Shown: positions 9,208 through 43,954 of the stretch, one piece after another | Position numbering within the stretch: position 1 is the stretch's first letter | Layout of the letters: each line of letters opens with the position of its first letter | DNA from: Caecitellus pseudoparvulus | Lineage: Eukaryota > Protista > Bigyra: Bicosoecida | Direction: 5' to 3' | DNA: 64,000 nt | Assembly (NCBI GenBank): GCA_965644315.1 | Contig: CBFFRQ010000018.1 | Span: forward strand, 1,240,001-1,304,000 | Translations under genes and position numbers: made by a program | Notes under the pieces: generated by a model | What the model was told of the DNA's origin: nothing | Databases searched by the model: none | What the model saw: the letters and a program-made list of their open reading frames with translations, nothing else

Positions 9208-9230
9208 GGGCGAGGCGGGGTCCGCCCTCC

Positions 9231-19130: not shown

Positions 19131-22100
19131 ATGCTCAGGAGCAGAGTGCTGGCAGCGCTTGCTGCGTTTCTTACCGTAAGTTTCGAGGGGCAGTGCGTGG
19201 TCGGCCCGAGACGCCTCGGCACAGGTTTGATTTGTTCCATGCAGTTGTTTCTCGTGGCTAGGGCAGCAGTCATTGAGGCTTCCCTGCAGTCGGCTGTCAA
19301 GCCTTCACCGCTGGGACTGTCGGTGCCAGGTGCGTGGACATCACATGAAACACCAAGAAAGCGAAACGCCCCATCCAGAGCGTGAAGCCGATCCCCGCAG
19401 ATGCTCTCTGGAGCGCTCAGCCACAAGGTGTTGCCTCGATCTCTGCAGCTGGGCAGTGGGTTCCTGTGGATGGTATGGCTGTGGACGTCTTCACGGACTT
19501 TGGCGGGCAAATGGAGTGCACCTACTCCCTTCAATCACTCCTGGAAGCTGACCCAGCCAGCAGCGGCGGTGCAGCGTCTTCGTGGGCTCAGAACACATCT
19601 TTTGTGGCCGCACGGCTTGTGCTGAATGGCGCGCCCATCCGCCAAAGCGGGTCCCTCCTGCAAGCGGGACGGGGGGAAGTCGCTCCAACGGGGGTTCTTA
19701 CAGGCGCCTTTGCCGGAAGTGTACCAGCTGGAACGATTAAAGCCATCCTGCAATGGAAGCAGTGGGGGCGCAGTGGAGCAAGGTGGGTCACTTCCCTGCC
19801 GCCAAGCGCCAGCTCAGGTCAGCGAGGGGGGCGGAGCTTGCTCTGTCGCTTGGTGGATCAGGCGCACCAGGTCGCTCTTGCTGCGCCAACATCGCTGCGG
19901 CAGCAAACCACATGGCTGGCTGTCCCACTTGCACCCCTTGCTTGGATCCAGGGGACGACCCAACGTGTCCACCTGGCTTTCAAGCTGCACGTGCGTCCGC
20001 AGCCTGCTGCCGTCTCACTTCAGGCTGGTGCTGCTTCTCTGGCCGTGCGATTTGTCCTTGACGGCCAATCCATGGAGCATCCCGTGGTGATTAAGCGATT
20101 TTTGGGCGGGGATGCCGTGTGGGGCGCCATGGCTGGCCAGTGGTCCATCGAGTTGCCACCCGGCCACCACAACGCAAGTTTGCAGTGTCTGCTTCGAGGG
20201 ACGGGGGTGCGGGCATGGTGGCTTGACCCAACATTCATGGATGGCTATGCTACTCCCTCCACCCTGTCTGTTTCCTTCAGTCACCTTGGGGAGGGGCTCT
20301 CTGGCCTGCTTCCAAGGCCGGGCCAGCCTGAGACCCCAGCTGCGAACGGGACCACTGTGGCAACTCGGTCCATTTCCCTTCCGCGCCAGTCCTACGTGAA
20401 GGTGACGTACAACGTTGATTTGTTGCGGCTTGTGGATGCGGCGGTGGACGCATCAGCCTGGCCCCCGGGCAGCGGTGTGGAGAGTTGGGTGACCGTGGAC
20501 GGCGGCGTGCTTCCGAGCAGCATCAGTTTTGCGAGCGGCACCCTTAAAGGGGACAGGCACCTCCGCGGGCAAGCATACACTAAACTACTCCCAGGCACTC
20601 ACACGGCTGCGCTGTACATTGCGGTGACAGGCGGTGGCCCCAGCCACTGGGCTCCTTCCAACGTGCTTAGCAGCGCAGTAAGGCAGCCGAGCCTGCTGGT
20701 GTCATCCATTGATGTGGACAACGCAGCCCCAAGAGTGCATTTGGATGGTGGCGAAACCATATCAGTCGATGAAGACTCGGGTGGCACCCCTCTCAACATC
20801 CTCGTCTCTGACCCGGATACAGAATTCGAGCCACACATGCACGTCGCCACAACTGTGCAAAGTGAGAACTGCACGCTGTCCTGTCAGTCTCCTGCTAACT
20901 CAGAGGCCTACATGTCAGCGTTGCCGCATCGCGTGGAGCTCAGCGGGCCTATGAGCAGCGTGAATGAGGTTTTGGTGTCGTGCTCCTGCAGTCCGGCGTC
21001 CAACTTTCACGGAACAGCGACGGTGGAGGTCGGGGTCAGCGACTTAGGCAACGTTGGTGCGGGGGGCACACGGAACACTTCGAAGGCCCTCACCATTCAA
21101 GTTTTCTCTGTCAACGACCCTGTCTCTATTTCAGCCCCAGAAGCTGCCAGCGGCCTTGAAGGGCAGGCGGTAAGACCCCCCCCTGCCCAGGTTGTGGACG
21201 CAGACGTTGCTTGGCCCGGCAACCCCACGCAACACTTGGACAGCATGTCAGGCCAAGCGTTTTCATTGCAAGTGACAGGCCAAGGAGGAAACCTCTCGTT
21301 TACTTCCTCACAGCTATCTGCGGAGCTTTTGCTCCGCTGCTGTGCAAAGGGCTCAGCATGCGAAGGCGCGGAGGTGGTGCTCCTGTGCCCTCTGTCTGCG
21401 CAGAATGCTCTCTTGACCCAGCTCATTTTTACTCCAGCGCCTTTATCGAACTTTCGGAACCAAGTTCACGGGGTGCACTACCTGGTTCATGACTGCGACA
21501 GCACTGACACTGATGACGGTCAGGAAAGCTTGCATACGGAAGCGAGCTGCAGTCCCCTGACTTCGGCTTCTGCTTTTACTCGCCTGGAAATCTCTCCCGT
21601 AAATAACGCCCCAACGTTGCAACCCTTTAGGTTGAACGCCTCAGTGTTGAGTTTCGTAGAGCCAGAGCTGTCGTCGGGGCAGAGTGCTGCAGTGCTCCCA
21701 ATGCCGCAGGAGGGCCTTGGGCTGCAAGGTACTGCCTCAGCAGCATCGGTGGTAGTGCCACTCCCTTCAGAAGAGGCAGGAGGAAGGCATGAGCTCCTGG
21801 AAGCAATGCTTTCTGTGCAAGCTGACATTGTCCCAGTGCTCTCAGTCCAGCCTCCAGCTGTGCCTTGTGGCATCCCAACCTCTGTATCTGTTGAGTTGCC
21901 GGTGCCGAGCAGCATCCACCCAGCACAGTGTAGGTGGAATGGCCTCATAATTCCTTCATCTGCACATGAAAGGGCTGGGATTGTCAAGTGTGAAGTGCAC
22001 GCGGCGTGCCACACCAGCGAGGCTCAAGGCTCCTTGTACTTGGTGTCTGAAAACGGTGGTGTTGTATCTGCCCCCAGTCGCTTGGCAGTGCTGCAGTCGC

Positions 22101-25100
22101 TGGGCTCAGTGTTTAGCCCAAAGAACAAGGTAGTCACAACCTGCCGGTCGTCCGTCAGGCTCTGCCTGGAAGCTGCCTTCATCGCACCGGCTGCTCAGTG
22201 CCGGTGGTGGCGCGGCACTGAGCAAGCAGCGGCAGGCTTCGAAGTCACCCCCGCGCAGCCTCTGCGCGAACCTGGCTGTGCTGGAGTAGTTTGCCCCCCT
22301 CCCAGAGGAGATGGCACCCAAGAGTGTCCCTATGTTGACGAGTGGACAGTTTCGTTGCTGCCTCTTGGGGTCGACCTAGAGCTTGACCCAGTATCTGTGC
22401 TGCGCCTGGCTCCGTCTCTTCTGTCGCAGCCTCTGGATCCTGTCGCAGTGTGTGCTGACGCCCCAAACACCATTTTCCTGCAACTCCTTGCATCCATTTC
22501 CGGCGGCGTCTTGCAAGGCAGCTGCTTGGTGAATGGACTGAGAACAGTAGTGAGCCTGAATGCCGGCGGCGATTCCCTTGCCTGCCAAGTGCCGCCCATG
22601 CCAATTGGCCAGCACACCGTCTCGGTCTCTGTCAGCTTCGACGAGTGGAAGGCGTCTCCTGTGAATGTCACACTCGTCTCCAGTGCTTGCTTTGAAGAAT
22701 CTCTGCACCAGGACCATGTGTTCCTGTCTGATGCGGCCACCGAGGTTGCCCTGCCGTACCCCAGTGAATGGCAGCAAGCCGCAGGTCATGTGTGGACTTG
22801 CAAGTGGTACTATCAAGCTGCTCAAGTCGGCGAGAGCGTGGGAGTCGGGGACTTTAATAGTGTTATTTGTGCAGCACCTCAAGCCTTACCGCTTGGTGGG
22901 CTGGTTGTCCGGCTGGCCTCAAACGCAGCAGGGCTCCACTACATTGCGCAGGTGCAGCGCTTTTCCCACCCAAAGGTTGCTTCTGCCCAGTGGAAGGCTT
23001 CAAACACCAGCGAAGGGCTGTTGCTCCATGGATGGAGCTTTTGGGATGGCCCTGCACCGTCTTGTCGTGCTGCTGGCCAGGCTGTTGTTCCCATGGAGTG
23101 GTTGTCTCCCTCCAGTGCATTTTGCTTCTTGCCCCGGCAGGTGCCAGGAGCTGGCGGGCCCGAAGTCTCTGGCGATGGGCACACATGGACCCCTCTCTCA
23201 AGTGTATTTGGTATTTCGAAGCACAACATCACTGCAGAGATTGGGGAAGTTGAACAGAGGGGCTCAAACCTGGATGTGACCTTCCTCGTCGCGGCTAGCA
23301 GCTGGGCTGGAGTTTCCTTTTGGTGCGAGGTTGGCGACACTGTTACGCAGGCAACACAAGCTGGGCACACAAAGGTAATGTGTGCACTTCATCAAAGAGA
23401 GACGGAGCAGGTAGCGAAGGTGTACGCCTTGCTGCCTGGCGGCGCCACGCAGGCGCTTGCTGAGTTCGTGGTGCCTGCGCTGGACGCCGCTGGGCGTTTC
23501 GGCCAGGTGGCGCAGCAGCGCACACAGTGGGACTCGCAACCATGCAGGATGGAGGACTCAACCCTTGGGAGGGTGTCCGCTTTCGCAAGACACATGTGCT
23601 CTTCGAACTTGACTCATAGGGTGACCACTGCAAGTGAAGGGCGACTGCCACGCCCTGCCGAGTGGCCCAACGCCACCGACAGTCCAGAGGAAGAAAGTGG
23701 AGAGAGCAACATTGAAGCAAGCCTTCGCCCCCTTGACATGCCATCCACAGTGCTTCGTGGGGCCGTTCTCCGCATACAGGTGGTCGCTGAGCATGGGGTG
23801 CACGGCGTGTCATGTGAGCTGGGCAACGCAGCTGCGGCAGTGCGAGCCACAAGCTCAGGCTCCTTCTGCACCTTTGCTCCAGCACAAGTGAGAGCATTGC
23901 ACGGGGAGGAGGCACTGTACATCACAGATGGTACTGTGAGGAGTTTGGCCGGAGCCTTGCGAGTCTTGCCAGAGCCACGGTTTGAGGGCATCCAACTTCT
24001 GCAGAGTGGCATGGCGTTGCTCGTCGGCCAGGACATCCCAGAGGGAATCCCCTTGTCATGTTCTCTTACATTCGGGCCGCAGCATGCTCTCATTCCGCTG
24101 AACTCTACAGCCGCGATGTGTCCGATTCGCGTGGCAGCAGGGCAGGTTGTCAACGCGAGGGTGTGCACTGCTGGTTCGACGTGGTGTACCTTCGTGGCCT
24201 TGCAAGTGTCCTCAGCCCTCCCTGCATTTGCTTCAGTGCACCCAAGCTTACCCCCAGCCAGCCAGCCGCACCCATGGTTTGTTCCGGACACATGGCACCC
24301 CTACGCCTCTCTAAAGGTGTCCTCCAATGATGAATCCGTGTCTCTGCTCGGGCAGGAACCACTGGCGAGCACTGGTGTCTCGTTCACAGGCTCTGGTAGC
24401 TCTGAGAGACTTGACCCCACCTTTGTGCGAGTCGTTGCCCAGCCGGCGATCGAAGGTGGGGTCTTGCTTGCGGGCATTTGGGCCGCTGAGACTTCACGGG
24501 TGACTTCCTGTGGCATGGGAGGCGTGGTCGGCCAGCTGGTGCATGAACACCCTGGACAGTACGCGTGCACCATACAGCCCGTGCCCCAGTCTACGAATGG
24601 GACCGAGGGTGCTTTCATTGAGCTGGATTTGATTTCGCTGAACGGCAGCCGATTGAAGACTGTCCTTGCGGAGGTTCACGTCCTTCCAGCATTTGAACCC
24701 CAGCTGCTTGCCAGCGAGTCAAGGGATGTTGTGGTGCGGTGCCCCAACTGCGAGATCTTTGCGACTGTTCACTGCCTTGTAAATGATGTGCTCATGGTGG
24801 AGCCCACGGCTGTCGGCCCAGATGCAATTGTATGTGGACCCATGCCCGAGGAAGGTCGACACAGGGTGCAGCTTGTCCTAGGAAGTTGGACACACCCTAT
24901 ATCCATGCTTGTGGAAGCAAATGCCCGCCCTGCACAGGCTCCCTTGAAGAACATGTCACCTCCCCCCCTTGTCGCTTGGGCCCGCGTTCACGGAGCAGCT
25001 GCAGAAGTGCCGTTGCACCTTGACATTTCTGGGTTTTTCCCACTCAAAACGGAACTCATTTGTAGGATCGCAAACGGGTCCATCCCCGCTCGGCTCACTT

Positions 25101-28100
25101 CGCAACACTCTGCCTTCTGCATGTTACCTGGGCTTCCCCCTGGAACGCATTCCTTGGAGGTGGCGGAGCTCGGCGCAGCAGATGCACTCCTGCTGATGAA
25201 CGTCACCGTCTCTGAAGCGCTTCAATGCTCTCCACAAGTGTCCAGCCTCCTCGCTGCCACAGAGGACAGCATCCCGTTGAAAGGCGGGACCTGCCACAGT
25301 CTCTCTCATTGCCTGATCAACGGTAGGCGGGTTTCCGTTCGCCCGACACGCCTGGGTCTTGGCTGCGACCTGCCTCAGGCGATGCTCGCACCTGGCCACC
25401 TAAGCCTCGTTCTTGTGCCTTTGTCTAAGTGGGACAGCATCAGCACCTTCGACATTATGGTGTTGGTGAGACCATCACTGAGCTCTTGGTTCGCCCAGAG
25501 CTCAGGCGCAAACGAGAGTTCAGCAATTTTCAAAATTGAGGGTAGTCAGTTTCAGATGCAGCTCTGGTGCGTCGGGAACATGCGCGACCGCTCTGCTGTG
25601 CAGTCCCTCAATCAAACTCACAGCACTTGCAGTTTGCCACCTGCGAGTCAATATGGGGAACTCTGTATAGAGAGTTGGCAAGGATCCCGTTTGCATTGCT
25701 TTTCCTCGCGAATTTCGTTGAATGTGCCAGGTGCTGCTGTGACCACAACGCACGCTTGGAGTGGAGTTGCCTCATCCATTTCAGTTCGACTCCTGGAGCC
25801 TGTCAGCGGTCCTGTAGAGGTGTTCGTCGGCGATTCAACGCGGAGCCATTGCTTGAATGAGTCTCCTGCGTTCGTCACCTGCCGCGTGATGTGGGGCGGA
25901 ACTGGAGGCACTCCAGTGCACGTAGTGCACCAAGAATCTGGCATTTTGCTCGGAAGAAGCACCGTGGAGTTTGTCCAAGCGCCGGTTGCAAGAGCGACTC
26001 CCCTGCTTGCACATTCTCCAGGCATGTTCAAAGTCTGTTGCGGGCACGTAGATACCCACCTGCCTTTGTCCGTCCATGTCGGCCTGTTCCCCGTGCTGAT
26101 CATAGGGATGCGGGACTCGTGTCTTGTGCTGCAAAGCGCAGACGACCTGGGCATTGGGGTGGTGAATGTGACCCTCTCACTCCCGACGCAGCCGACAGTG
26201 CAGGTCATTGGGAGCCTTGACTTCGTTGCCCGGCCACGGGTTTCTCTAGTGCGCCGTCATATAGTCGCTGGGCTTGGCAGCGCAGTTCCCCTCAAGAGCA
26301 CGTCGCCGCTCTCTGAGGAGCTACTATGCGAGGTATCGCTGGAGTCCTTCCCATTCTCTGCGCACGTGAGCCCTTTGAGACTGTGCTCAATTCCTGCAAG
26401 TGCGACGCCACCTGCTGTCTTCAGTGTGCGAGTCATCGATTCACTGGGGCAGCAGCACGTGATCGGAGGGGAACTGGCGGTCCGGGTGCAGCTGGTTGCC
26501 CCACCTGCAGTGTTCGTTCGAGGCGGCACATTGATGCTCGAGGGGAGTACTTCCATAGAGCTGGCAGGAACACGGCTACACCTGCTGACAAGCTGCACTC
26601 TGACTGGGCAAGGCAGCGACATGGAGTCGACCGTCGCTGTCGCAGGCTCCAGCACAACAAGCGCAAGGTGCAGTTTCAGTGAAATTCCGCCAGGTGTGTT
26701 CAGTCTTAGTGTGGCTGCTGGCGAGTGGACGCAGGCTATTGGAGAAGTCTCTATCCTCCCAATGATGAGGGTGGAGCGCGTTGTGTCTGACGTCGTCCCT
26801 GCAGGCAGACCTTTGCGGGTGGAGCTGCAAGGCTCCGGCTTTCGACCCGAGTCACCGCTGCATTGCAAGTTGAGCGGCCATCTGTCAGCAGCAGTGTATA
26901 AGAACTCGACAGTCATGGAGTGCATTCTCCCAGCGGTCTCCCTGACCGGAGGCCCTGCTTTTTCCGTGTGGACTGACGGGCTCCTCGATGCTCTGTGGGA
27001 AGGGGAGCTGGCGGTGGTGCAGCCATTCTTGCAAAGCTGCACAATTTTTCAGGCGGGCAGGCATTCTCATGCACTCCGCAAGTTTGTGCTTGGCACCAAT
27101 GGCTCCCTTGGGTTGGATCCTGCTTTGCTTGCTTGCCCGGCGGGTGCACCAGAGCACGCCGAAGGCACACTTGAAGAGACGAGCGTGTGGTGTGAGGCAG
27201 TGCGACCGCGACACGATGCCTGCGTGATGGTTTCCACTTTGAGACTCTGCTGCCAGTCCGAGGTTCATGTGCTTGACCCTGTCCTGACACATACCGAGCC
27301 GCCCTTCCTGGAGGCTGGGCAGCTCACTTCTGTGACTCTGCATGGCGGGCCGTTTTTCCCCGAGGCCTCATACAGCTGCTTTCAAAAGAATGGGGTGGCA
27401 GGAAAGGGTGAATTTCTTTCTTCAAGCATGTTGTCATGCAACTTTGCTTCGAATGACTCACACAGTGACTTTGTGGGGATTAGGTGGGCTTTGAACAAAA
27501 CTCAGGTCCTCTCCATTGGTGTCCTGCACCCACTGCAACTGAGGCGTGCAGAGCCCCTCCCACTCCTTGCTGGCCTGGCAGCCGAGTTGCCAATCCCAGT
27601 TTCAGGCCTAAGTTCCATACCTAATCAGGTGCTTTGTCAGGTCAATGGGCCGGCTAGCCGTGCCCGTGTGGCGCTGCGCCCTGATGCTCTTGTGCTCTGC
27701 CACCTTCCACCGCTTTCGGCCGGGAACCACACCGTTAACGTCGTGCAAAGCAGCGCTAAAGCGACACTTGCAGTGCCGATTCTTGCGGAAGAAGGACCCT
27801 GGGCCCAAGTGCTCATGAATGAAGGGTCTTGGCGTGTGTCAGTTTCTGCCGAGTCGCGCGTTCAGCTGACAGCATGTACATGGGTTGGATCACAGCGAAC
27901 GTACTCATCACACCTCTGGGACACGGGGTGCGTTTCCCCTCCATCCGCGCGTCAGTCGCCTCCCCAGAGCGTTCTCGTGACAACATCGTCGGGTCAAGTG
28001 GTGCCCCTTGCACTTCCATCGAAGGGGCCTAGCCTGGAGCGTCCCATGTCCCGGCTGGAAGCCACATGGTCACGCCCGCTGGTTTTGGTTGTATCGCACG

Positions 28101-31100
28101 CTGGCTTGGTCTCCATGCCGCTGAACTTGGAGTACGGGAGCATTGACACCCCATGCTCTCTATACGTGAAAAGCTCGAATGCGACGAAGCAATTTCCAGG
28201 CAAAGTTGCTGTGGAGGGATCGGCTCAGGTGGTGTGCGAGGTCACCGTCGGGCATCTGGCACCACCCGCTGGGGTGGCCACGCTGGCCTGGGGAGCTTTC
28301 CGCCGAGATGTCACGCTGCTGGGTGCACCACGGATCTCGACATGTCATGTCAGGTGGATTGATGGCACCCTGATCGTGCACGGGGCCGGGTTTTTGCCCG
28401 AGCACCAACTAGTGTGTGAATCTGCAGGCCAGCGAGTGGGTGCCATTGTCCACTCAGCACACCATGTGTCTTGTCGGATGGATTGGAGCCCCCATACTCC
28501 CAAACCACTGCAGCTTTTGGCTGGGAATGCGGCTTTGATGGTCCCTGACTGCGTTCCTACGCCTGACGCTGACGGCGTTCCTGCTGTTGGCGTGTTAAAG
28601 GCCGCGACCTCAGCGCCGCCGCCCGCGGTCCTTGCCAGCATTTCGCCAGAGTCAATCAGCGCTGGCCAAGCCCAAGACATCTTATGCACGGGACTGGGAC
28701 TTCAAAAGATCGATAGCTGCCTCGTAAATGGAAAGGATGTGCCGACAATGGTCTTGAACGCATCGACGGTGCTGTGCTCGTTGGCTGTTCCAGCTCCCCA
28801 AAATGCTTCGCTTCAGCTTCGCACTCTTGAGGGCTTCAAGACCCCTGCGGTGCAAGTCCATGTGACACCTAGGCCGCAACTTGTGCATGGGAAGCATGCT
28901 AGCCAGTCAGTTGTGGCGTTGCTGGGCACGAATCTGCGGAGAGAATGCGCAGAGGCGTGTGTCGTGGGTGGCCAGCCAGCGCCAGCGCGCTGGATAAACT
29001 CTTCCGCGGTGGAGTGCAGAGTTCCTCAATCGCTTTTTTGTGTCCCTAAAAATGTGTCACTGACCCCGTGCTTGCATGCAGGCCATGTGGAAATCCGCGA
29101 TGTACCCGTTGCTTGCCATCCCCCCCGATCGCTTCTTGCGCAAGTTGGCAAAGCTGTGGATGTTGAGATCCCCGAGTCTGGTCTGCATGTGCGCTGCTGG
29201 CTGCTTGACGCCCGCACACAAATCGAGATTTTGCACAACGGCACGCACTGCACTTTCGTACCTTCGGTGCCAGGGCAGTTTGAAGTGGCGGCAGAGACAC
29301 ATGCTGGGAGGCTGCTGAGAGTGACCGTGTTCGTTCTTGACCACGGCTCCTTACAGACGTTCAAGCAACGGCGACTGACACCTCATCACCACACGCAAAA
29401 TTTGACCTCAGACATTTCCCATGTCCCTGCATTTGCGAAGATGTCTTGCTTCGTTGGGGGTCTCCGCGTGTACACAGACAGGCAAGGCGGCACAGCCAGC
29501 TGCACTATACCCCCCTCCCTGCCCCCTGGGAAACAGATAGTCAAGTTATTTGCTGACCAGTTCCTTGTAGCGCAGAGCACTGTACACTTCCTCCCTGCTC
29601 TCACTTTGCAAAGCAACGAGGTGCGAGGGCGCCCAGGCCTTCCAGCCGTCCTTGGCGTGTCAAATGCGGCGGCGCTTGCAGGAGGTCAGTGCGTGTGGTC
29701 CTCGGGGCACGTGTCGGACTTTGTTCCAGTCAATGCCACCCACGCGTGGTGCATGGTTCCAAGGACAGAATCGAATGGGTCGGTTGTGTCGCTGGCGTGG
29801 CAGGGGGTCCCGTTGGAGGTCGGCGCTGCCCGCTTGCGACTTGACGCTCCCCCCCCTACGGCGAAATTGGTCCCATCAGCTGGACCACTTCACAAGGAAA
29901 TGACCATTCAAGTTGATTTGGATCTTCCAGATGTAGTTTCTCCGACGACGGTCCTTCGCTGCGTGGTCGGCAGTGCGAGGGTGCCAGCCGTGAGGGGCCC
30001 AGCAGGCAGCGTCCTTTGCCAAGTACCAGCAAGTGCAGTATCCCGCACAATCCCAGTCGCAGTGGAAGCACCACAAGTGTCCCCTATGTGGAGATCGGAG
30101 AAGCTCACGTTTTTGTACACTCAGCAAGTGCGGATTCTGAGCCTTGCTCCGGCTGCAGTGCCAAGAGGACGTGCGATCGGGCTGCTTGTGAGCCTAGACG
30201 GGGAGGCATCCAATAATGTGGCTGCCTGCAAGATTGGAAGACTGGAAACCCGCAAAGTGATTCCTGTCAGTTCCAATGTTATTCAGTGTTTTGTGACCCT
30301 GCTGCAGCGACCAGGGACAGTGAATGTGTCAGTGTTGCTCCTGGACGGGACAGAAAGCACACCTGCACTGCTCTCTGTTCATCCTGACCTGCACATTGAT
30401 TCTCTGCACCCTCGCCTGGTTCAAAGTCCTGCTTCCAATGCGTCGGTGCAACTTCGAGGTTCCGGGTTCTCAAGCTGGTTGCACCCTCGTTGTGCTGTGG
30501 ATGGGGTGAACACAGCGGGCATGGTGTCCTCAGACACGTTCCTCACGTGTATGCTCCCCCCCCTGCGCGCAGGGAACTACAATCTCTCGGTCACCTTTTT
30601 CGGTGTCGTCGAGGTCCATGCAGGGTCATTCCGTGTCGCTCCGATGGTGAACGTTGGGCATGTAGACTCGAAGGTTCTTGCACGTGGCGAATCACTGTCC
30701 GTCACGCTTGAGGGCGCCGGAGCATGTGACCCGCCAGTTCAAGGCCGATGGGCACCTATGTCATCAAATCATCAGAAAGAGACTGTGCTTTGCGAAGCAG
30801 GCGAGTCATGTGCAGTCGTGCGGTGCCCGTCACCCTCCAAGTCACATGGTTTGCACAGCCTGCAAGTTTCCCTGGACGGAGGAATTTCGTGGAGTCAGTC
30901 CAGTCCCGACGTGCGAGTTGTCAGCAAGATGGAAATTGTGAAGGTCAACCCCTCAGTATTTCCGGTTGGATTTGACGGATATCTGAGCTTCCACGTTCAG
31001 AAGCGACTCGTACCGGGCACTGTGCAGCTTGCGGCAGCAATCGAGGCTCACAATGTGACCTATACGAATTGCTCATGGACTCAAGCAAGCACACTGAGCT

Positions 31101-34100: not shown

Positions 34101-37100
34101 TTCGAGACCCGTTTTGCGAAGTGACAGGGCAGCTACGAAGGCCAGGGTTTCCCGTGAACGATTCGGTTGTAGTGTGTACTATCCTAGGGCCACAAAATGC
34201 GTTTCAGAAGCCAAACGCAGGGTACTTGCGAGTGGCAGTATCCATTGTGGACGCGCTCTCGGGTGCCCGGTCAGACGAGGTCCAGGTCACGCTGGTACAA
34301 CCACCATTCCTGGGCCACATACTTCCTCAAGCGCCTTTTCTCAGCGATGTGCAAGACTTTCACGTCATCGGTAGTGGATTTCTGGCCACAGGATTTGAAA
34401 AGTGCTGGTGGAGACTGCCTGGTACAAACCAGACTGTTCAGCAGCCAGCTCAGGTGGTTTCCAGTTCTGCGGTGAGGTGCTCAGCGATCCCCTTACAGCA
34501 GATGTGGCCAGAAGCCAAGAAGCTGAGAGTGTTGGTCACCAGTCTGCCCAAAGTCTTCTTAGCTTGGGAGCGCTCCCTCCTCGTCAGCTTTGTCCATTCT
34601 CCCTCGTTGAGCGGCGTGCAGCCTCAGTTCGTGGCCAGTTCAATGCGCTCTACCATTCGGATTGTCGGAACTCACTTCCTTACTTCGCCAGGGATGCTCT
34701 GTGAGGTGGGGCCCCATAAAATGCCTGTCACCCTTCTGTCAAGCGTCGAGGCCCAGTGCGAAGTGCCCCCTCTGCAGGCTGGGCAGCATAGCGTCTCATT
34801 GCTGACGCAGTCAACTGAAGTCAGCTGCGTGGACTGCACTGTGCATGCGGTGAATGTACCCCCAGTATTGTCCGTGGCCCCCACTTCCATACATGTTGGA
34901 TCGGAGGTGGATGTGCAGCTGACTACGGCTGTTCCTGTGGATTCGAGGCTGCATCGCCACCTTCGCTGCATGGTTGCTGGAATTGCGCATCAGCTCATCA
35001 GCATCAACGCCAGCCAACTACTGTGCAAGGTACAGCTTGATTCCATTCATGTCGGTCAAGTCAGGGCAGCATTGTCGGTCGAGGGGGGTCGCGAGCTGGC
35101 GAGTCCTGCTTTCATCCAAGTGTTTCAAGAACCAGTGCCTTTACGTGTCCATCCCCAGTTTGTGCAAGGACTTTCAGCAGACCTTGTGCTCCAAGGAGCA
35201 TTCCCAGTCGCAAGTTCTCTTTCGCTAGTGTTTTTGGACAGTCGCCAGGCTCATGAGTGTGTGCGGAACGGGCTTCACTCAGTCGCGTGCCGCGTAACCC
35301 GCACTTTGCCGGGGACTGCCCAGTTCTGCGTGTCGTTGAATAGGGGTGCTCAGTGCAGCTTGAACAAACTCACAGTCCATGTCGTAGGTGTCCCCACTGT
35401 TTTCGCTCTGCACCCGGGGCGTGGGCCAGTGACAGGGGGCACGAAGGTTCAGGTCCAAGGGCGAAACCTCCCTGTTGGCGCTCCGTGCCAGTGCTTGTTC
35501 GGGGAGCTTCCATCCCCTTGTTTCATCATTGCAGCAGATAGTGCTTGGTGCAGTAGTGCCCGTCGATTGGAAGCCTCAACAGTGCCCGTTAGCGTGCTTG
35601 TGAGGGGTGCTCGCGCTGAAGCTGGGGCATTGAACTTCTCGTACTTCGTACCCCCCTCTATCCCCACCCCTTTACTCGTCACCGCAACACCACCACTAGC
35701 CCACCACGGTTCCCGGGCAAGCGTGATTGTGCAAGTGCCGACCGGCCTGGACAGCGATGGTGCAGTTTGCAGCATGGGGCAGCACAAGGCCGCCGCTACA
35801 CTGCTCAACTCGTCTCACATACTGTGTGAGCTTCCCTCAAACGCTCCCATCGGATCTTCACGCCTTCCTGTGCAAGTTATTTTCGATGACATCGTGGTCA
35901 CAGCCCCTTTGGCGTACTTTGACGTGAGAAGCGTGCCCCGCATCCACAGCACTCATCCAAGCGTGTTGCATGCTGACAACGCACAGAGACTTTCTGTGCA
36001 CGGGGCGGGCTTCCTGCCTGGGACAGTGATTCAGTGCGAGGTCGGGGACTACGCCGGTCCAGCACAGTACGTGAGTGAGTCCCGTGCAGTTTGTCTCCTC
36101 CCGCCTCTGCGAGCTGGGGAGTACTTGCTGCGGGTGCGACTTGGGCATGCAGTCTCTCTTCCAGCAGATTTCATAGTGCGGGTCGTTGCTCCACCTAGAG
36201 TTCTTCAAGTTAGGCCGAGGTCTGGGCCACATGCAGGTGGCACTCGTGTCATTGTGCAAGGGAGGAACTTCCTTGGAAGCAACGCCGTGTGGTGTCATTT
36301 CGGGGTCCAGAGAGTGCCAGCCGTTCGTGTGGCATCTGACACCGAAGTGCACTGTCTGGCCCCACCAGTGGCCCTTCCAAGTACGGTCCAATTCTGCATG
36401 TCGTTTGACAATGACACTTGCCTTGCATCTACGACGCCCTTCTCTTACTATTCGCCGCCCCGAGTGTGGAGTTTGCACCCTCAAGTTTTCTTGCGGGGGC
36501 GCCCGGCCTCTGTCTTTGTACACGGAGAGGCCTTCGACCAGACGATTGGCCTTGCGTCCTCTGATGCAATCCTTTGCCGAGTCGGCAACCAAACCTTTCC
36601 AGCCCAGCTTCTTGCTGCGACCCGTCTTGAGTGCCTGGTCCAAGGCCTTGCCGAGGGCAAGCATGCTCTGGACATTTCTCTGAATGGGCTCGATTTTCTT
36701 CACTCCGGTGGTTTTGTGTCAGTGTATGCAGCTGTGGAAGTTCAAAGTGTGTGGCCAGGATCTGGCCCAGCACTTCCGGGTGGCACCCAAGTCACCCTCT
36801 CTGGGCGGAACTTCCCGAGCTCTGCGCTGGTGCTGTGCAGGTTTGGAGATGCCGACGTCAGAAGTGTCGTCGTGGACAGTACTCGGATGCTCTGTGAGGC
36901 GCCCCCTCAAGCCCCGGGCGCAGTGCCGATCCTCGTGTCTGTGAACACGGTGGACTTCGTCGACACCGGTTTTTCGTTCACCTACACGCCCGCCGTCAGC
37001 GTGGAGGGTCTGTTCCCGAAGAGTGGTTTGCTCCTCGGACAAGCTCCAGTCTTTGTCCGCGGGTCCAACTTCCTCAACTCAACGTCGTTGGCATGCTCCA

Positions 37101-40100
37101 TGTCGAGCGGAGCGGCTCAAGTGAAGGCGCGGGCATTCTTTGTAAACCCCAGCCTGGTCGTGTGCATGACCCCATCGCGAGTTGCGGGGGTTCAAGTCTC
37201 ATCGCAAGCTTCTAGTGTCGTGCTGGAAGTATCCAACAATGGGCGGGACTTCTCCAGCAACGGTCAGCAGTTCAAGTACCTCAGTGCTTGCCCTCCAGGA
37301 CATTACTGTCCACACGCAACAGTGCTGCCAGCGCCAAACGGCACGTTTGCCGAAGGATTTGGGAACTTCAACTTCACACTGTGTCCTCCTGGGACCTTTC
37401 AGCCCCAGCCGGCTCAGCCTGCTTGTCTTCCCTGCCCGGTCGGCTACTTTTGCCCCGACTTTGGCATGGCACAGCCGCTTCCTTGTAAAGCCGGCCATGT
37501 TTGTGATGAGTTGGGCCTCAGTGACTTGACGTCACCTTGCCCTCCAGGTTTTTGGTGCCCACGGGGAACGAAGGGCTCGGTCGAAGGCAGCATGCAAGGG
37601 CCAGCGCCTTCCACCGGACTGAATTCGGTTTGGGCGCTGAATGCTGAGTTCGGGGAGACCTCCTTCAACGCCACTGCTCGGGCGTGGAACATCTCTCCCC
37701 GCGCATATCCAGAGGATGGAAAGTTTAGGGTTGAGCACCCTCCTTTCTCCTTCTCCGCTTCTGGAGACGGGCACTCTGAGCTCCCGTTGCTTGCGGAGCG
37801 TCCACTGCCATGCCCCATGGGGCAGTATTGCCGCGCAGGGGTGGCAACGAATGTCTCGGTCCCTGGAAACTTTTCTTCCCCCCAGCCGTGCTTTAGTGGG
37901 TTCTTTTGCCCTCGATCATCGCATACCCCCGAAGGCTCTGGGCCATGCCCGTCGGGGTTCTTCTGTCCTACTCAAACAGAGGCTGTGCTGTGCCCGGTCG
38001 CACACCAGTGCCCTGGCGTCGGAAACACAGCCCCGACGCCATGCCCCCCTGGAACGTACAACCCGCTCCGCCAGCAAAGCAATTGTACACTGTGCCCACT
38101 TGGACACGTTTGCCCATCGGAAGCCATGTCGCAGCCCAAGCTGTGCCCCCCTGGCTTTGTCTGCGATTCGAAAGGCTTGCCAGCCCCTGTGGTGCTCTGT
38201 CCGGCTGGCTTCTTTTGTGAAGAGGGAACGCTGAGCAGGAACACAAACTTTAGCATCCCGGAAGACCCGATGAAACCGCCATTCATCGGCCCGCCCATTC
38301 CAGAGTTTAATAATGCGAGCAAGGATGTCAGGGGGCTTGTAGGCGAGGATCCCCACGTTGAGGCTCTCCGCATGCGAGTTGTTCAGGAGTACGTGGTTTT
38401 TGCTGACCCACAACATTCCCCAACGGGATCCACTGTCGGTGCGACGCTTGCGGCGTTTAGCAACGCGCAGCTGAAGCCCTTGCCTTGCCCGCTTGGCACG
38501 TTTTGCCTGGGTGGAGTGCAGCACGCCACGACCACACCCTGGATCCCCCAGACCCCGGAAGGCGCAGTGGCCCCCCAACCTTGTGTCGAAGGCCGGTACT
38601 GCAGGTATGCCACTCCTTCGGCGGGTGGCACGGGTCCCTGCTTTGCTGGGCACTACTGCCCGCCGCAGGCAAGCTACCCCACGCAGGCCGCCCTCGGCAC
38701 GTTTGCAGCGGGGCAGTTCAACGTCGCACCAACTCTGTGCTTTCCAGGGACATATGCGCCCCTACTTGGCCATGCGGGGTGTTTGCCGTGTCCAGCAGGC
38801 TTTTCATGTGAAGGGTATGGCACCTACGAGCCGAAAGTGTGCCCCCACGGCACGTACCGTAGCGCACAGGACTCAGTGTCTTGCAAGATTTGCCCCAGGG
38901 GAACGTTTACCCCCCACACTGGAGTGACAACTGTGACAGATTGTGAGCCATGTCCTCAGGGCCGGATTTGCGGTCTGGCAGAAATGTTTGACTTGACCAG
39001 CCAGTCCGGTCCATGCCCCGAGGGCCACACTTGCGGTGAGAGGACAACTCAAGCAAAAATGTTCGATCACGAATGCCCAGCTGGGCACTACTGTTACGAA
39101 GAAACCCGAACAGATGAGCAAATGGACCTAATGTGTGAACCGGGCCACTTTTGTTCTCGAAAGACCAAAGGCTTTCTCCGGAACCGGAACAAGTGCAGCG
39201 TCGGGCAGTTTTGCCCACAAGGCACGGCAGAAGGTTTCAACAAGGAAACAAGGTGCCCTCGCGGCACGAGCTCACGAGCCGGTTCGGAGAGTGTTTTGGA
39301 CTGCGAAGTCCTCCCAACCAGCATCTGTGACAAGGTCGAGGATGGGCGGTACTACCCAAGCCACGCGTACACATTTCAAGGCGACCGTGTCCTCATCGCA
39401 GACAGCCTCCGGGAAGTCGAGGCACTTGCTGTGCTGAACCCCATCAACGAATCAAGTAGTGATGCTTACTGGAGAAACGACACCTTGGAGGTCCTGCGAG
39501 TCTGCCCTCCCACTGTTCCGCTCGCTCTCCGGCAAGTGGGTGAAAGGGGGCCAGCCACCGGTCACAACATAACGTTATTCGGGTTCAACTTCCCGACTCT
39601 CCCAGGAGCTCTTGTCTGCCTTTGGGAGGGGAAGCTGACGTACCTCGACGGGTACCAAAGGCCATTCAAGCACCGGACCTTGGCTCGGGCAGAGTCGGAG
39701 TTCGTGTGCCACTGCCCAACCCCTCGCTTGATTGGCACAAATGTGGATGTGGGAGGATACGTTGAAGCCAATGTGACACTGCAGATGGTCGGGGGATCCC
39801 CAACAGGCGCTGTTCGCGCCGAAGTTCCGGTTGTTTTGGATCCTACTCTCGGGGTGAACGCCACCGATGCCCTTGTGCGAGCTGCATACGGCAGTTGCGA
39901 GCTGCAAGCAGGGGAAGGCCAGCCTGCAGCAGGACATGACCTGAATCGATGGTTCGAGCTGCGGGGGTTGTCCATGGCAAAGCTATCGTTTGACTTTGCG
40001 CACCTTCCGGAGGAGTTTGTGTACGGCGAGCACTTTACCATCGCCATTTACGTGGATCAAAGTGTCTGCACAGACGCACGCTGCGATGTGACGCGAACTC

Positions 40101-43100
40101 TCATTCCTAACACTCCTGAGACGGAGCACCTCCTGGAGACCACTCCGTGCAAGCACCCAGTCGAGCTTCCCCGATGGTTCATCGACCCTTCAGTGCCAAA
40201 GAACCAAGCTTTTAGCATCAGCGTCACGGCTCTGGAGGACGTCAAGATTCACATCGAGGCGCACATCCTGTATGGGCTGTTCCTCCCCATGGCCCCACAG
40301 CTCGTGAACACGACGACCGTGCAGGTGATGAGCCCGTCCAGGGCAAACATGACGTTTGGGCTTCGCAGCCCAGCAGTGAGGGAGCTCCCCACCGTCTTGT
40401 CATCTCAACGGAAGCGTGTGCCTGTTGAGTACTCTTTCATGGTCAGCTTTTCGCGAGACTACATGGACAGCATCATCACTCCACTGAACCTACCGCCCCG
40501 CTTTCGGGACACTGAGCGGGGCAGGGTCCTGGTGGACTTCGATGCACGAACGGTAGAGGCAACGACACCCTGGATTACAGACCCTGAGAGTGATGTCAGG
40601 GAAGGTCCGGAGTACTGGGAGAAGCCAAGTGGCGACATCCTACACAACATTGCCAAGTACAGGGAGGTGTGGCATGAGACCATTGACCTCGGAAACGGCG
40701 AGGCAGCGTACCAGTGGTCGAGAATGGTTCTCCCCTACATGCCGTTCTTCTCCAGCTGCAAGGGATTCGACAATCATATCCCTTTGTTTGCTTTGCTGGA
40801 GGACGATGCTTGCGAGCTTCCTGACCCCGATGATGGCCTGCTGTCTGAAGAGCGGTACAACTTCCCACCAATGCCGCACCCTGATGACACGTATGTCGCT
40901 GGGCCAATGGAGGTGTTCCAGTCCCCGATCGCTGACGTGTGCAGCCGCACACTGCAGTGCCGGTTCGAAGAGAACCTGCAAGCTGCCGACATTCGAGAGC
41001 GCTGGTTCGAAGTTCCCGGAGACACCGCTCTCTTTGAGATTCTGCGCAGTCCTGTGTCATTGGAGGACTTCTACAAGAATGGCGACTTGCTCGACTCGCT
41101 GCTGTTGTCGCAAGGCATCGATGTCTTTGTGCCTGTGTCCGTGGACAGGTCTGCGGCAGAGGAGCTGAAGGGGGACTGCACAACTCTGTGCTTCCCCCGG
41201 TCCATGACCCTCGACATTCCATACTACCAAGTGAACTACAACGAGAAGCGCATCTTAGCAGCTACATTGGTCCTGGAGGACTTCGATAGAGACTCTTCTA
41301 ACTCGGCATATGAGTTGTCCGTTGCGTTTTACCCTCTTGGCTGGCTAGATCTGGTCATCGCCTTTGCGTTCAACGTCGAGACGTTCATTGTTCTGTTTGT
41401 GGTGATTGGATTGCTGAGTCTGGCTGCAACGACCATTTACTGGTCCTTGAACCGCCTGCTCACGCGGCAGGCCGACCCACCACAGTTCAGATTCTTCCAC
41501 ATGCTTAGTGTCGTGGTCCCGCCGCCGACGCTGGGCATCACCTTGGCACTCGTCCCTCTGGCAATTGTGCTGGCTATCCTCTTTTTCATTCTGCGTGGAG
41601 ACGAGCTGTTCTTTTCTGTGACTGTGCTGGACAGCAACTCAGCGTGGTTTTTAGACGGTGTCGTTGGGCACTGGATGCAGAGCAAAGTGGACATTCGCCT
41701 CAAGGACCAGTACCGCCGCGGGCGAATGGGGCTGGGATTCTTGACCATAGCGATGTTCATGATGGTGCTCAGTGCCCGCATTTACATCCCCAAGCCGGTC
41801 TCTGTGAAAGAGCAGAGGCTAGCACAAGCCTCCAGGTACAACGAGCAGGTCAGCACTTGGTTGCCCACCTTCTGGAAGCGCTCAAACTTCATCTTTTGCT
41901 CGTTGATGTTCAGCTTCTTTCTTGTGCTCATCACAGAGTTCTCGTTCTGGGAGGGGTTCGGGGACTACATCTGGTACATCATTTTCATCTACAAGTTTGT
42001 GGACATCGCTGCAGGCGTCATTCTGGAGAGCCAGCTGCAAGATTCCTTACTGTTGACACCCTTCGGAGCCGCCTTTGGCATCATCCAAGCTTTGGTCACG
42101 CTGGGTAGTGATGACTTCCAGGACTTTGTCATCGTGTACTTTATTGAGTTCGGCCTCATGATTGCCGACCGTGTGTACATCGGACCAGGTCTGGACGCTG
42201 TCATTGACTGGCTGGTCGATACAGCGACGTCCATGCACCGGAGAGTCTTGGATATGATTCAGTCAGTGACAGCTCTGACCCTCCAGCAAGAAGTCGCGCG
42301 TGAAGAGCGGCAGGCCAAGGGCTTGCTTGCCCCTGAGCCCCCTCCCGTCGAGGAGGGCTCTGAGGAGACGGTGGAGCCCATCGTTGACGCTTTCGCAGGC
42401 TACTCGATGGAAGTCGTGTCCTTGTTTTTCAACCCCGTTTTGATCCTCATGATGATTGCGTTCCGCGATGAGATGGGCATTCCAGAGCTGTATGGCATCA
42501 AGGCTCAAGACATGGAGTACTACTTCTGGTTCTCGGTCGTGATCCTCTTCTTCCAGCTTGCATGCGACATGTTCCTTCACAACGTCTTGGAGCTGTTCCA
42601 TGGGTGGAAGATCCACGACTACTTGGTGTTCGTCCGCTTCCACTTCAACGAGCGCAGGGTGCGGTGGGTTGGCATGGACGACCAGTACGATGAAGCCCTG
42701 GATGAAGGCATCCGCACACTTCACCAAATGGGCTTTTCCTCTCAGTACTATTTTATGTCCTTCATTCATGTCACGGGCATGGTTCTGGTGGTCCTGGGAA
42801 TCGAGGCCATGATGAGGGTGAGCTACAACTTCTTCGGCGACCCTGCCACACTGTTGCTGGTTCCGTTCTTGTGGCTGCTTATGACGGCCCTGCAGTTCAT
42901 TGCAGTTTTCCTGGCAGACAAATTCGGGCTCTGGTCTGTGAAGCGCTCGTCAGGGACTGGCATGGCGGATGCGGGAGACGGCGACTGGGGCATTCCAAGC
43001 TTGTCAGAGCTGATGAACTTGCAACGCCGCAAGAAGGGCAGTTCATACAGCTCGTGGCAGATGAACGCAAAGCTGTCTTCAGACACTTTTAGGTTTAAGT

Positions 43101-43954
43101 TTCTGGACTACAATCGTGCCTGGTTGGTTTACCATTTACCAGAAATCCTGACTCCACGCACTGTGCAACGAGCACGGCCACGGCTCATTGCTCAGTTTGC
43201 GCGCATGCTCGGGCTTCTCGACGAAGGCGGGCAGGAGCTGAGTGGGGAAGAGGACGGGGGGCCGGAACGCAAGTTTGGAAACGTGGCACTCTCGGGATCA
43301 GACCGGGCTGTTCTCCGGTGGTGGCTGAATACTGCCCGCCGCAGGCTTGCCATGAGGGGAGCGGCAGCGCCGATCATTCGTCGCTCCATAGCCAAGGAAC
43401 GGGCACGACACGCCGAAGCAGTGGACGTCTTGATGGGCTTTTCCATGGATCAAATGGATCACATGTTCCAAGCAGCATACCCAGACATGGAGGAGCTGGA
43501 TTTAGTGGCTTGGAAGTCCTTCTTTGCGCAGAGACAGACCTACAAGGCTGTGCCGAAGGGGTCGGCTCCAGCCGGTGACAGCGAGCTGTTGATGGCTGAC
43601 ATGCTGGACAGCCAGGAACAGCAAGTTTCCAGATTTGGACCAGTCTTCCTGTCTCCAACGTCAAAGCGCTTGCTGCTTGTGTGGTACAACCAGGCGCGCA
43701 TGTCGCTGAGAAGACGCTCGGGGAGAAGGCAGGTTGTGCGACGCACGGCGCAAGCCCAGCCTGCCCTCCACGAAGAGCATGAGGACACCCCTGAGTGGGC
43801 TAAAGGGCCCTTGCAATTGAGTCCAGCGACAGCTGCTCTCGCCCGCAAGTGGCTGCAGCTGGCACGCTTCCGCAGAAGTGCCCCGCAACGACGCACCGAC
43901 GGGCGAGGAGTCGCGCCCTCTGGCACTCGCTCAGCATCAAGGCGGAATGCTTGA
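19131..43954 (+). CDS. giant (~8,227 aa) secretory-pathway multipass membrane protein with cadherin-like, IPT/TIG and GCC2/GCC3 Cys-rich repeats; exons 19131-19175, 19245-19329, 19401-43954
   Basis: Introns 19176-19244 (GTAAGT...ATGCAG) and 19330-19400 (GTGCGT...CCGCAG) add a signal peptide MLRSRVLAALAAFLTLFLVARA|AV in frame to the stop-free 8190-codon ORF. IPT motifs include PxSGPxxGGTxVxxxGxNF..CxFG..CxxP..VSxNGxDF. CPxGxYC repeats and ~11 hydrophobic segments lie near the C-terminus. Confidence 0.9.
21820..37285 (+). repeat. protein-level tandem array of IPT/TIG-like domains (~90 aa each, roughly 50-55 units by length)
   Basis: Recurrent P..G...GGT.v...G.gF....C.fg.....a...s...v.C..P....G...v.vs.nG pattern. 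It is clear from ~29850 onward and degenerate upstream. No DNA-level identity between units is visible. Confidence 0.75.
37285..39310 (+). repeat. GCC2/GCC3 (ephrin-receptor-like) cysteine-rich repeat array
   Basis: Many CPxG[HFYT][YF]C(P) units, e.g. CPPGHYCP, CPVGYFCP, CPPGFWCP, CPSGFFCP, CPAGFFC, CPAGHYC, CSVGQFCP. Two non-Cys inserts interrupt the array (~37570-37800, ~38230-38480). Confidence 0.85.

What the first reader, a model, noticed from the sequence alone, without database searches (positions are those of the whole stretch)
19131..43954. An 8,200-aa surface filament fused to an unrecognised ~11-TM module: possible giant sensor/receptor
Seen: signal peptide, three-repeat head, cadherin-like units, ~50-55 IPT/TIG-like units, GCC Cys repeats, ~600 aa of non-repetitive ectodomain, ~11 TM segments and a ~340-aa cytoplasmic tail, nearly all in one 24.5-kb exon. 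Known: IPT arrays occur in fibrocystin/PKHD1L1 and plexins, which are single-pass; GCC-repeat plus multipass combinations occur in apicomplexan/ciliate CRMP-type proteins. I do not recognise this full combination. Inference: at ~4 nm per Ig-like unit the ectodomain could project on the order of 200 nm. It may act as a tethered antenna (prey contact or flow sensing) coupled to a channel- or transporter-like membrane module.
Basis: partly seen in the sequence, partly recalled or inferred. Interest (0 to 1): 0.8.

Follow-up and report, generated by a model that had tools for sequence, protein, structure and literature searches.

The report
Giant TIG-stalk receptor, TMEM16-like membrane domain
This is a real gene for an 8,200-residue cell-surface protein of a marine protist. 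It belongs to a widespread, unstudied eukaryotic family that joins a very long rod of Ig-like domains to an 11-helix membrane domain, whose predicted shape is closest, though only weakly, to the TMEM16/OSCA family of ion channels and lipid scramblases.

Summary
An unbroken 24,573-base ORF (19382-43954, +) encodes 8,190 aa:
- 45 detectable IPT/TIG units, with room for about 11 more
- about 26 CPxGxxC (ephrin-receptor-like) motifs
- a 669-aa membrane-proximal ectodomain
- 11 TM helices and a 340-aa tail

A 45-base first exon (19131-19175), with GTAAGT...CAG intron borders, supplies a likely signal peptide.

The combination is not unique. The membrane module defines a large unnamed family: 1,852 cluster representatives, 18 of the best 150 at 4,000 aa or more. 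Members occur in oomycetes, Cafeteria, Cantina, brown algae, Bigelowiella and the jakobid Andalucia, and all are annotated hypothetical. Aphanomyces XP_008870714 aligns collinearly over 3,400 aa.

This genome has two members from two deep clades. The scan has already followed up the other one, on contig C31 (s1-652542).

Most likely it is a long-reach contact or force sensor. Expression and function are untested.

The parts
19131..19175 (+). Exon 1: start codon and the N-terminal 15 residues of a likely signal peptide (MLRSRVLAALAAFLT)
   Evidence: Read by eye. It is followed by a GTAAGT donor. No in-frame ATG with a hydrophobic N-terminus exists inside the large ORF. No RNA evidence.
19176..19378 (+). 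Putative 203-base intron (GTAAGT...CAG), phase 0
   Evidence: 19379 is the only acceptor that keeps the frame. 5 of the listed strain differences fall in these 203 bases.
19379..43954 (+). Exon 2: the whole remaining coding sequence, including the stop codon
   Evidence: Uninterrupted ORF of 8,190 codons from 19382. Collinear with Aphanomyces XP_008870714 over 3,400 aa.
19382..20707 (+). N-terminal head (residues 1-442), no recognised domain
   Evidence: No Pfam hit and no internal repeat by BLAST. Residues 70-698 match the N-termini of two other giants, P0031 and P0052, at 20-24% identity, E about 1e-22.
20708..21829 (+). Residues 443-816, with three VNDxP-like linker motifs. The 'cadherin-like' reading is unverified.
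   Evidence: Only Big_9 at E 0.33. Motifs seen.
21830..37312 (+). IPT/TIG stalk: 45 detected units of about 93 aa (residues 817-5977), with gaps that could hold about 11 more
   Evidence: Pfam TIG E 2.5e-34 and 4.9e-98, TIG_plexin 1.9e-7. Self-profile.
37283..39331 (+). Cys-rich region with about 26 CPxGxxC motifs (GCC2/GCC3, ephrin-receptor-like), residues 5968-6650
   Evidence: Pfam Ephrin_rec_like E 1.1e-11, 4 stretches. Motifs and Cys density.
39332..41338 (+). Membrane-proximal, non-repetitive ectodomain (residues 6651-7319). Its last 200-450 aa are conserved across the family.
   Evidence: No Pfam hit. The Atlas feature search gives only weak beta-sandwich leads, PPC/CARDB. BLAST collinearity with all family members starts at residues 6860-7120.
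41339..42931 (+). 11-TM domain (residues 7320-7850). TM2-TM11 resemble the 10-TM core of TMEM16/OSCA.
42590..42751 (+). Cytoplasmic TM9-TM10 loop, the most conserved stretch of the family (HGWK...RYRF...RW...FSSQYY)
   Evidence: Invariant R7758, W7762, S7786 and Q7788 in 71 sequences.
42932..43951 (+). 340-aa cytoplasmic tail with three basic Trp-helix motifs (43274-43357, 43634-43717, 43805-43876)
   Evidence: The motifs are conserved in the family alignments. Coordinates.

Best explanation
The locus is one gene: a 45-base exon and a 24.6-kb exon. It encodes a giant type-I-like multipass surface protein.

Shown:
- It belongs to a large, unnamed eukaryotic family with a fixed plan: a variable head, a long IPT/TIG stalk, GCC2/GCC3 Cys repeats, a conserved membrane-proximal domain, a conserved 11-TM domain, and a tail with three basic Trp helices.
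- The family splits into two deep clades, and this genome has one gene of each.

Inferred:
- The ectodomain projects far from the cell, about 180-220 nm if each Ig-like unit spans about 4 nm.
- The odd number of TM helices puts the tail in the cytoplasm.
- TM1 is an added helix, like TM0 of OSCA/TMEM63. TM2-TM11 adopt a TMEM16/OSCA-like 10-TM core.

Most likely mechanism: binding or pulling at the distal end is passed through the membrane-proximal domain to the 10-TM core. The core answers by opening an ion or lipid pathway, or by moving the highly conserved cytoplasmic TM9-TM10 loop and tail. The protein would then be a long-reach contact or force sensor.
For: Gene and frame:
- ORF.
- No indels, and half of the sampled differences synonymous, in diverged strains.
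- The same synteny with the dynein gene on an independent metagenome scaffold.

Family:
- 36-47% identity hits in Chrysoparadoxa, Ectocarpus and Discosporangium.
- 1,852 representatives at E<=1e-3 and 514 at E<=1e-30, with the module at the C-terminus of proteins up to 7,926 aa.
- Named members: Aphanomyces, Albugo, Bigelowiella, Cantina, Pythium, Thraustotheca, Cafeteria, Andalucia.
- Collinear alignment over 2,600-3,400 aa at 32-36% identity.
- Cantina Trinity transcripts of up to 5,327 aa carry stalk and module in one ORF.
- Two clades with 99% local support; only two copies in this genome.

Fold:
- AF2 pLDDT 85, pTM 0.85, 11 TM helices.
- In the full search of 48,161 chains, 9 of the top 21 rows are TMEM16/OSCA/TMEM63/Ist2.
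- Three of the four wide-search OSCA/TMEM63 alignments start earlier, at model residues 32-36, so they include TM1, as expected if TM1 corresponds to TM0. OSCA3.1 and the second-look OSCA1.2 row start at 70 and 52.
Against: - There is no RNA evidence for this organism; all runs that hold the locus are DNA contigs.
- hhalign of the family profile against this genome's own OSCA and anoctamin paralogs gives 0.2% probability, the same as reversed-sequence nulls. The OSCA-versus-anoctamin control gives 75%.
- Pfam RSN1_7TM and Anoctamin models do not hit the locus.
- Foldseek finds nothing.
- No member of the family has been studied, so the function is inference only.
Confidence: 0.5

Rival explanations
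1. The protein is a structural surface protein: an adhesin or an anchor for the cell coat, scales or flagellar hairs. The TIG rod is a spacer or tether, and the 11-TM domain serves only as a strong anchor and oligomerisation platform, with no channel or signalling activity.
For: The ectodomain is built entirely of adhesion-type modules. TM1 and TM11 are not conserved in sequence, and few polar residues are conserved inside the membrane. There is no sequence link to any channel family.
Against: A plain anchor would not need an 11-TM domain conserved from jakobids to stramenopiles. Nor would it need an invariant cytoplasmic loop (R7758, W7762, S7786, Q7788) and three conserved tail motifs.
Confidence: 0.22
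2. The protein is a CRMP-like contact sensor. Like apicomplexan and ciliate cysteine repeat modular proteins, it would detect contact with a prey, host or surface and trigger regulated exocytosis (extrusome discharge), possibly as a heterodimer of the two paralogous clades.
For: It shares the plan of GCC2/GCC3-type Cys repeats plus a multipass domain with N-out/C-in topology. CRMPs act as A/B heterodimers through their TM domains (PMC9815656) and are proposed contact sensors for rhoptry or mucocyst release (PMC9670195). Here two deep clades co-occur in one genome.
Against: CRMPs are described with 9 (Apicomplexa) or 5 (Tetrahymena) TM helices, not 11 (PMC9670195, PMC9815656). No named relative found here is apicomplexan or ciliate. 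The earlier follow-up of the paralog also reported no CRMP kinship (s1-652542). No CRMP sequence was available for a direct test.
Confidence: 0.12
3. The long ORF is not one functional gene. It would be several genes or a decaying relic that happens to stay open, or the TM module is expressed separately from the stalk.
For: There is no transcript evidence for this organism. A prokaryotic gene caller on a metagenome copy called only the last 1,552 aa.
Against: 8,190 stop-free codons cannot arise by chance. No indels appear in strains 1.5-2% diverged, and there is an excess of synonymous changes. Relatives keep the same order of parts over 3,400 aa, and Cantina transcripts join stalk and module.
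Confidence: 0.04

Closest known systems
Uncharacterised giant 'IPT/TIG domain-containing' proteins of oomycetes and other protists (Aphanomyces invadans XP_008870714/H310_07159, 7,478 aa; Albugo laibachii CCA22724, 7,926 aa; Cafeteria KAA0165573; Andalucia ANDGO_00679)
   Same: Same order of parts: TIG stalk, GCC repeats, membrane-proximal domain, 11-TM module, and a tail with three Trp-helix motifs. Identity is 32-36% over 2,600-3,400 collinear residues.
   Different: The number of TIG units and the head vary. This protein lacks the four tail cysteines (CxxC...CxxC) that most members keep. None of these proteins has a known function.
TMEM16 / OSCA / TMEM63 / TMC channel-scramblase superfamily (TCS; PMC11534332)
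   Same: The predicted TM2-TM11 align collinearly with their TM1-TM10. The extra N-terminal helix and the N-out/C-in, 11-TM topology match OSCA/TMEM63. A long helix, TM7 here, runs on into the cytoplasm.
   Different: No detectable sequence or profile similarity. No OSCA-type cytoplasmic domain between TM2 and TM3. No N-terminal cytosolic domain; a roughly 7,300-aa ectodomain sits there instead. Activity is unknown.
Apicomplexan/ciliate cysteine repeat modular proteins (CRMPs)
   Same: A large ectodomain with ephrin-receptor-like Cys repeats, a multipass C-terminal domain, and two paralogous lineages per genome.
   Different: CRMPs have 9 or 5 TM helices, Kringle/EGF/MAR modules and no TIG stalk. 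Homology of the membrane domains was not testable here, and no alveolate CRMP appeared among the named hits.
Polycystin-1 (PKD1) and adhesion GPCRs
   Same: A giant Ig-like-repeat ectodomain on a multipass domain (11 TM in PKD1), thought to turn contact or force into a signal.
Fibrocystin/PKHD1L1 and plexins
   Same: Arrays of IPT/TIG domains on the cell surface.
   Different: Those are single-pass proteins with G8/PbH1 or Sema/PSI and GAP domains. None of these is found here.

Membership tests
Unnamed TIG-stalk / GCC / 11-TM giant receptor family | C-terminal 11-TM module with the HGWK...RYRF...RW and FSSQYY loop motifs | tested here: met
   36-47% identity to family members. It scores within a profile that finds 1,852 representatives. 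Invariant columns.
Unnamed TIG-stalk / GCC / 11-TM giant receptor family | IPT/TIG array followed by GCC2/GCC3 repeats, N-terminal to the module | tested here: met
   Pfam; 45 units. The same Pfam pair is recorded for the relatives P0119 and P0182.
Unnamed TIG-stalk / GCC / 11-TM giant receptor family | Collinearity with other members beyond the membrane module | tested here: met
   Query residues 4780-8179 against Aphanomyces 4213-7452 at 33% identity; similar for P0013, P0019, P0036 and P0063.
Unnamed TIG-stalk / GCC / 11-TM giant receptor family | Cytoplasmic tail with three FGPV...W...ARR-type helices | tested here: met
   Motifs at residues 7965-7992, 8085-8112 and 8142-8165 align with the family consensus.
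TMEM16/OSCA/TMEM63/TMC superfamily | Ten-helix core fold in the same order and topology | tested here: inconclusive
TMEM16/OSCA/TMEM63/TMC superfamily | Sequence or profile similarity (Pfam Anoctamin PF04547, RSN1_7TM PF02714) | tested here: not met
   hhalign gives 0.2% probability, equal to the reversed nulls, while the OSCA-versus-anoctamin control gives 75%. No Pfam hit in any of 71 members. Genome-wide PF02714 and PF04547 searches hit other loci, not this one.
TMEM16/OSCA/TMEM63/TMC superfamily | Dimeric assembly (TMEM16, OSCA, TMC) | tested here: inconclusive
   The homodimer prediction returned no verdict.
TMEM16/OSCA/TMEM63/TMC superfamily | Ion conduction or lipid scrambling through a TM3-TM7 groove; acidic Ca2+ site on TM6-TM8 (TMEM16) | not testable with these tools
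   Conserved E7665, D7729 and E7737 lie on the equivalent helices TM8 and TM9. No model coordinates were available to check their geometry.
CRMP (cysteine repeat modular proteins) | Ephrin-receptor-like/GCC Cys repeats in the ectodomain | tested here: met
   Pfam PF07699, E 1.1e-11.
CRMP (cysteine repeat modular proteins) | Conserved core of two EGF-like domains plus 9 TM helices, homologous to Plasmodium/Toxoplasma CRMPs (PMC9815656) | not testable with these tools
   There are 11 helices here, not 9, and no EGF hit in Pfam. No CRMP sequence or model was available for comparison, and no named hit is apicomplexan.
Polycystin-1 / adhesion GPCR | GAIN/GPS site, PLAT and PKD_channel domains, or a 7TM core | tested here: not met
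Fibrocystin / plexin | Single-pass membrane anchor with G8/PbH1 or Sema/PSI domains | tested here: not met
   Eleven TM helices. Only TIG, TIG_plexin and Ephrin_rec_like are found.

The most novel reading that the evidence does not exclude
The 11-TM module is a very divergent, previously unrecognised branch of the TMEM16/OSCA/TMEM63/TMC superfamily, permanently fused to a roughly 200-nm extracellular filament. That would make it a tether and a force-gated channel or scramblase in a single polypeptide. It would be ancient and widespread in free-living protists, with two paralogous clades that may pair.
Probability: 0.2. Interest if true: 0.85.

Novelty: new variant of a known kind. Interest (0 to 1): 0.6.

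Why it matters
How unicellular eukaryotes outside animals and plants sense touch, prey or surfaces is largely unknown. This family is large and old. It reaches from a jakobid to stramenopiles and Rhizaria, holds some of the longest proteins in these genomes, and has no studied member.

If its membrane domain really is a TMEM16/OSCA-type channel or scramblase, the family would be a natural case of a gating tether built into the channel protein itself. It would add a new branch to a superfamily central to mechanosensation in plants and animals.

Oomycete members, in plant and fish pathogens, offer tractable systems to test a role in zoospore contact sensing.

Tried and rejected
- Pfam on the last 1,357 aa, on six sub-segments and on all 71 family TM domains gave no consistent family. 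There were only single-member chance-level hits such as Meckelin, CSG2 and ZIP.
- PDB sequence searches with the protein and with the family profile found nothing.
- Foldseek against PDB found nothing at E<=1e-3, with either the 901-aa model (pLDDT 62) or the 571-aa model. The Atlas shape search with the long model gave only noise.
- hhalign against OSCA and anoctamin paralogs of the same genome was negative.
- The homodimer prediction for TM2-TM11 returned no verdict. It is not evidence either way.
- The word-based protein searches saturated at 8,000 candidates and returned few hits. The search from the Andalucia member added only two relatives.
- RNA evidence: no RNA run holds the locus. The four runs laid were all DNA contigs, so the intron and expression remain untested.
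- BLAST of the head against itself found no triplication.
- Literature searches by accession and by domain combination found no paper on this family.
- Polycystin-1, adhesion GPCR, fibrocystin and plexin were considered and rejected, because their defining domains are absent.
- The spliced model (exon 1 joined to exon 2) was not assembled or searched. All searches used the large exon by reference.
Full report
**1. The observation**

The window holds an open frame of 8,190 codons at 19382-43954 on the + strand. It sits between a 2,775-codon ORF and a 6,641-codon ORF, both on the other strand.

The large ORF has no in-frame ATG followed by a hydrophobic N-terminus. An ATG at 19131 opens 15 codons (MLRSRVLAALAAFLT) that end exactly at a GTAAGT donor. 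The only phase-0, in-frame CAG acceptor places the second exon at 19379. It rests on my reading of the sequence only.

Pfam confirms the ectodomain modules:
- IPT/TIG at E 2.5e-34 and 4.9e-98, and TIG_plexin.
- Ephrin_rec_like at E 1.1e-11.

A profile built from the protein's own units finds 45 TIG-like units of about 93 aa between residues 817 and 5977. The gaps between them add up to about 1,080 aa, enough for about 11 more diverged units. The estimate of 50-55 is therefore fair.

Residues 5968-6650 carry about 26 CPxGxxC motifs. Residues 6651-7319 have no Pfam hit. Hydropathy and AF2 both give 11 TM helices between residues 7320 and 7850. The tail is 340 aa.

Two details were not verified:
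- The 'three-repeat head' shows no self-similarity by BLAST even at E 50.
- The 'cadherin-like units' give only Big_9 at E 0.33. Three VNDxP-like linkers can be seen by eye.

**2. Is it a real, single gene?**

No RNA run holds the locus. The four runs I laid on 18800-24700 are DNA contigs. They include marine metagenomes and other isolates that differ by 87-122 substitutions in 5.9 kb, without a single indel. Of the 30 listed coding differences, 15 are synonymous and 16 lie at third codon positions. This is what purifying selection on this frame predicts.

An independent metagenome scaffold carries a 99% identical copy with the same dynein heavy-chain gene downstream.

In the relative Cantina marsupialis, Trinity transcripts encode up to 5,327 aa with stalk and membrane module in one ORF.

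**3. What it belongs to**

The membrane module alone finds 36-47% identical proteins, all unnamed, in Chrysoparadoxa, Ectocarpus and Discosporangium.

A 13-sequence profile of module plus tail was searched against 1.84 billion cluster representatives:
- 1,852 proteins at E<=1e-3 and 514 at E<=1e-30.
- Among the best 150, 18 are 4,000 aa or longer, the longest 7,926 aa.
- In these long proteins the module lies at the C-terminal end.

Named members, every one 'hypothetical' or named only after TIG or ephrin-receptor-like domains:
- Aphanomyces invadans XP_008870714 (7,478 aa)
- Albugo laibachii CCA22724 (7,926 aa)
- Pythium, Thraustotheca, Cafeteria, Cantina
- Bigelowiella natans
- the jakobid Andalucia godoyi, annotated after a Guillardia protein

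BLAST shows collinear similarity far beyond the membrane part. One example is residues 4780-8179 against Aphanomyces 4213-7452 at 33% identity. Even the head (residues 70-698) matches the N-termini of two metagenomic giants.

So the 'full combination' is a conserved family plan, not a peculiarity of this organism. Papers searched by accession and by domain combination do not mention it.

This genome has exactly two members: this gene and an 11,595-codon gene on contig C31. A FastTree of 72 membrane domains places them in two deep clades, each with 99% local support. Each clade also holds oomycete and Cantina sequences. This points to an old duplication; the root is a midpoint root and is not tested.

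The scan has already followed up the C31 gene (s1-652542). It came to the same family-level view.

**4. The membrane domain**

With 71 family sequences, AF2 gives a confident model: mean pLDDT 85, pTM 0.85. It shows 11 TM helices. One 52-residue helix (TM7) continues into the cytoplasm.

With the ectodomain outside, the odd helix count puts the tail inside, and the basic loops fit that orientation.

Conservation is concentrated at the membrane borders and in the cytoplasmic TM9-TM10 loop (HGWK...RYRF...RW...FSSQYY, with invariant R7758, W7762, S7786 and Q7788). Conserved acidic residues lie at E7665 (start of TM8) and at D7729 and E7737 (TM9). TM1 and TM11 are variable.

Sequence methods see no known family:
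- Pfam on all 71 members.
- PDB sequence profile.
- Foldseek.

Full structural alignment does give a consistent signal.
- In the second look at Foldseek's 990 best chains, the top 14 rows are all TMEM16, OSCA or Ist2. Z runs from 9.1 to 5.9, and nhTMEM16 aligns 207 residues at 4.6 A.
- The alignments are collinear over model residues 59-568, that is TM2-TM11 against TM1-TM10.
- Three of the four wide-search alignments to the 11-TM OSCA/TMEM63 proteins start earlier (residues 32-36) and include TM1, as expected if TM1 matches their TM0. OSCA3.1 and the second-look OSCA1.2 row start later, at 70 and 52.

Against this:
- hhalign of the family profile against alignments of this genome's own 11 OSCA-like and 6 anoctamin paralogs gives 0.2% probability. 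That is no better than reversed-sequence nulls. The OSCA-versus-anoctamin positive control reaches 75%.

I put the chance of a true TMEM16/OSCA-type fold at roughly one half, and the chance of common descent lower. This differs from the earlier follow-up of the paralog, which reported that the membrane domain resembles nothing solved.

**5. How it most likely works**

Shown: a secreted-type N-terminus, a very long rod of Ig-like domains, Cys-rich repeats, a conserved membrane-proximal domain, a conserved 11-TM domain, and a conserved cytoplasmic loop and tail.

Inferred: the rod holds a distal binding head up to about 200 nm from the membrane. Binding or pulling is passed to the 10-TM core. 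The core either opens an ion or lipid pathway, as TMEM16/OSCA/TMEM63 proteins do (PMC11534332), or shifts the conserved cytoplasmic loop and the three basic Trp helices to signal inside the cell.

Rivals:
- A purely structural adhesin or coat anchor. This is hard to square with the deep conservation of the cytoplasmic parts.
- A CRMP-like trigger of regulated secretion. The plan and the two-paralog pattern are similar, and CRMPs act as TM-domain heterodimers in contact-triggered rhoptry release (PMC9815656, PMC9670195). But CRMPs have 9 or 5 helices, and I could not test homology.
- A non-gene. This is very unlikely.

A homodimer prediction gave no verdict.

**6. Verdict**

It is a new member of a widespread but unstudied family, best described as a new variant of the giant multipass adhesion or sensor receptors.

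Expression, location and activity remain untested.

Noticed in passing
window 44028-63953 (-): A 6,641-codon ORF converges on the giant gene with only 73 bases between the two stop codons. Its syntenic copy on a metagenome scaffold carries dynein heavy-chain Pfam domains (DHC_N2, AAA_6, AAA_7, MT and others).
   Followed up: partly
window 1-18000 versus 18000-58000: There is a sharp composition step: about 70% GC upstream against about 58% across the giant gene. GC3 is 0.62 for the giant gene, 0.72 for the dynein gene and 0.84 for the 2,775-codon ORF at 9231-17558. Within the giant gene, GC3 rises to 0.71 over the bin that holds most of the membrane domain.
   Followed up: partly
G000:C31:580875-615659 (-) (L002-L007): This is the paralog, an 11,595-codon open frame. 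It has a thrombospondin-type WxxW...C motif near its N-terminus, the same 11-TM module at 25-33% identity, and a much longer, coiled-looking tail. A 100% identical fragment (P0037) is in ENA.
   Followed up: partly
G000, many contigs (e.g. C20:153520-157477, C36:21416-22849, C57:185744-187117): This 30.6-Mb genome holds at least 11 OSCA/RSN1_7TM-like and at least 6 anoctamin-like open frames. One OSCA-like gene and one anoctamin gene sit side by side on C20.
   Followed up: partly
family alignment A1/A2, tail region (window about 43360-43630): Most family members keep four cysteines in the tail (CExCLS...TLCLxC), which could be a zinc knuckle. This protein has lost all four.
   Followed up: no
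P0176 and P0173: Fragments of the family are deposited under Symbiodinium names; one is 49% identical to this protein. They may be contaminants from a stramenopile or true dinoflagellate members. This was not resolved.
   Followed up: no
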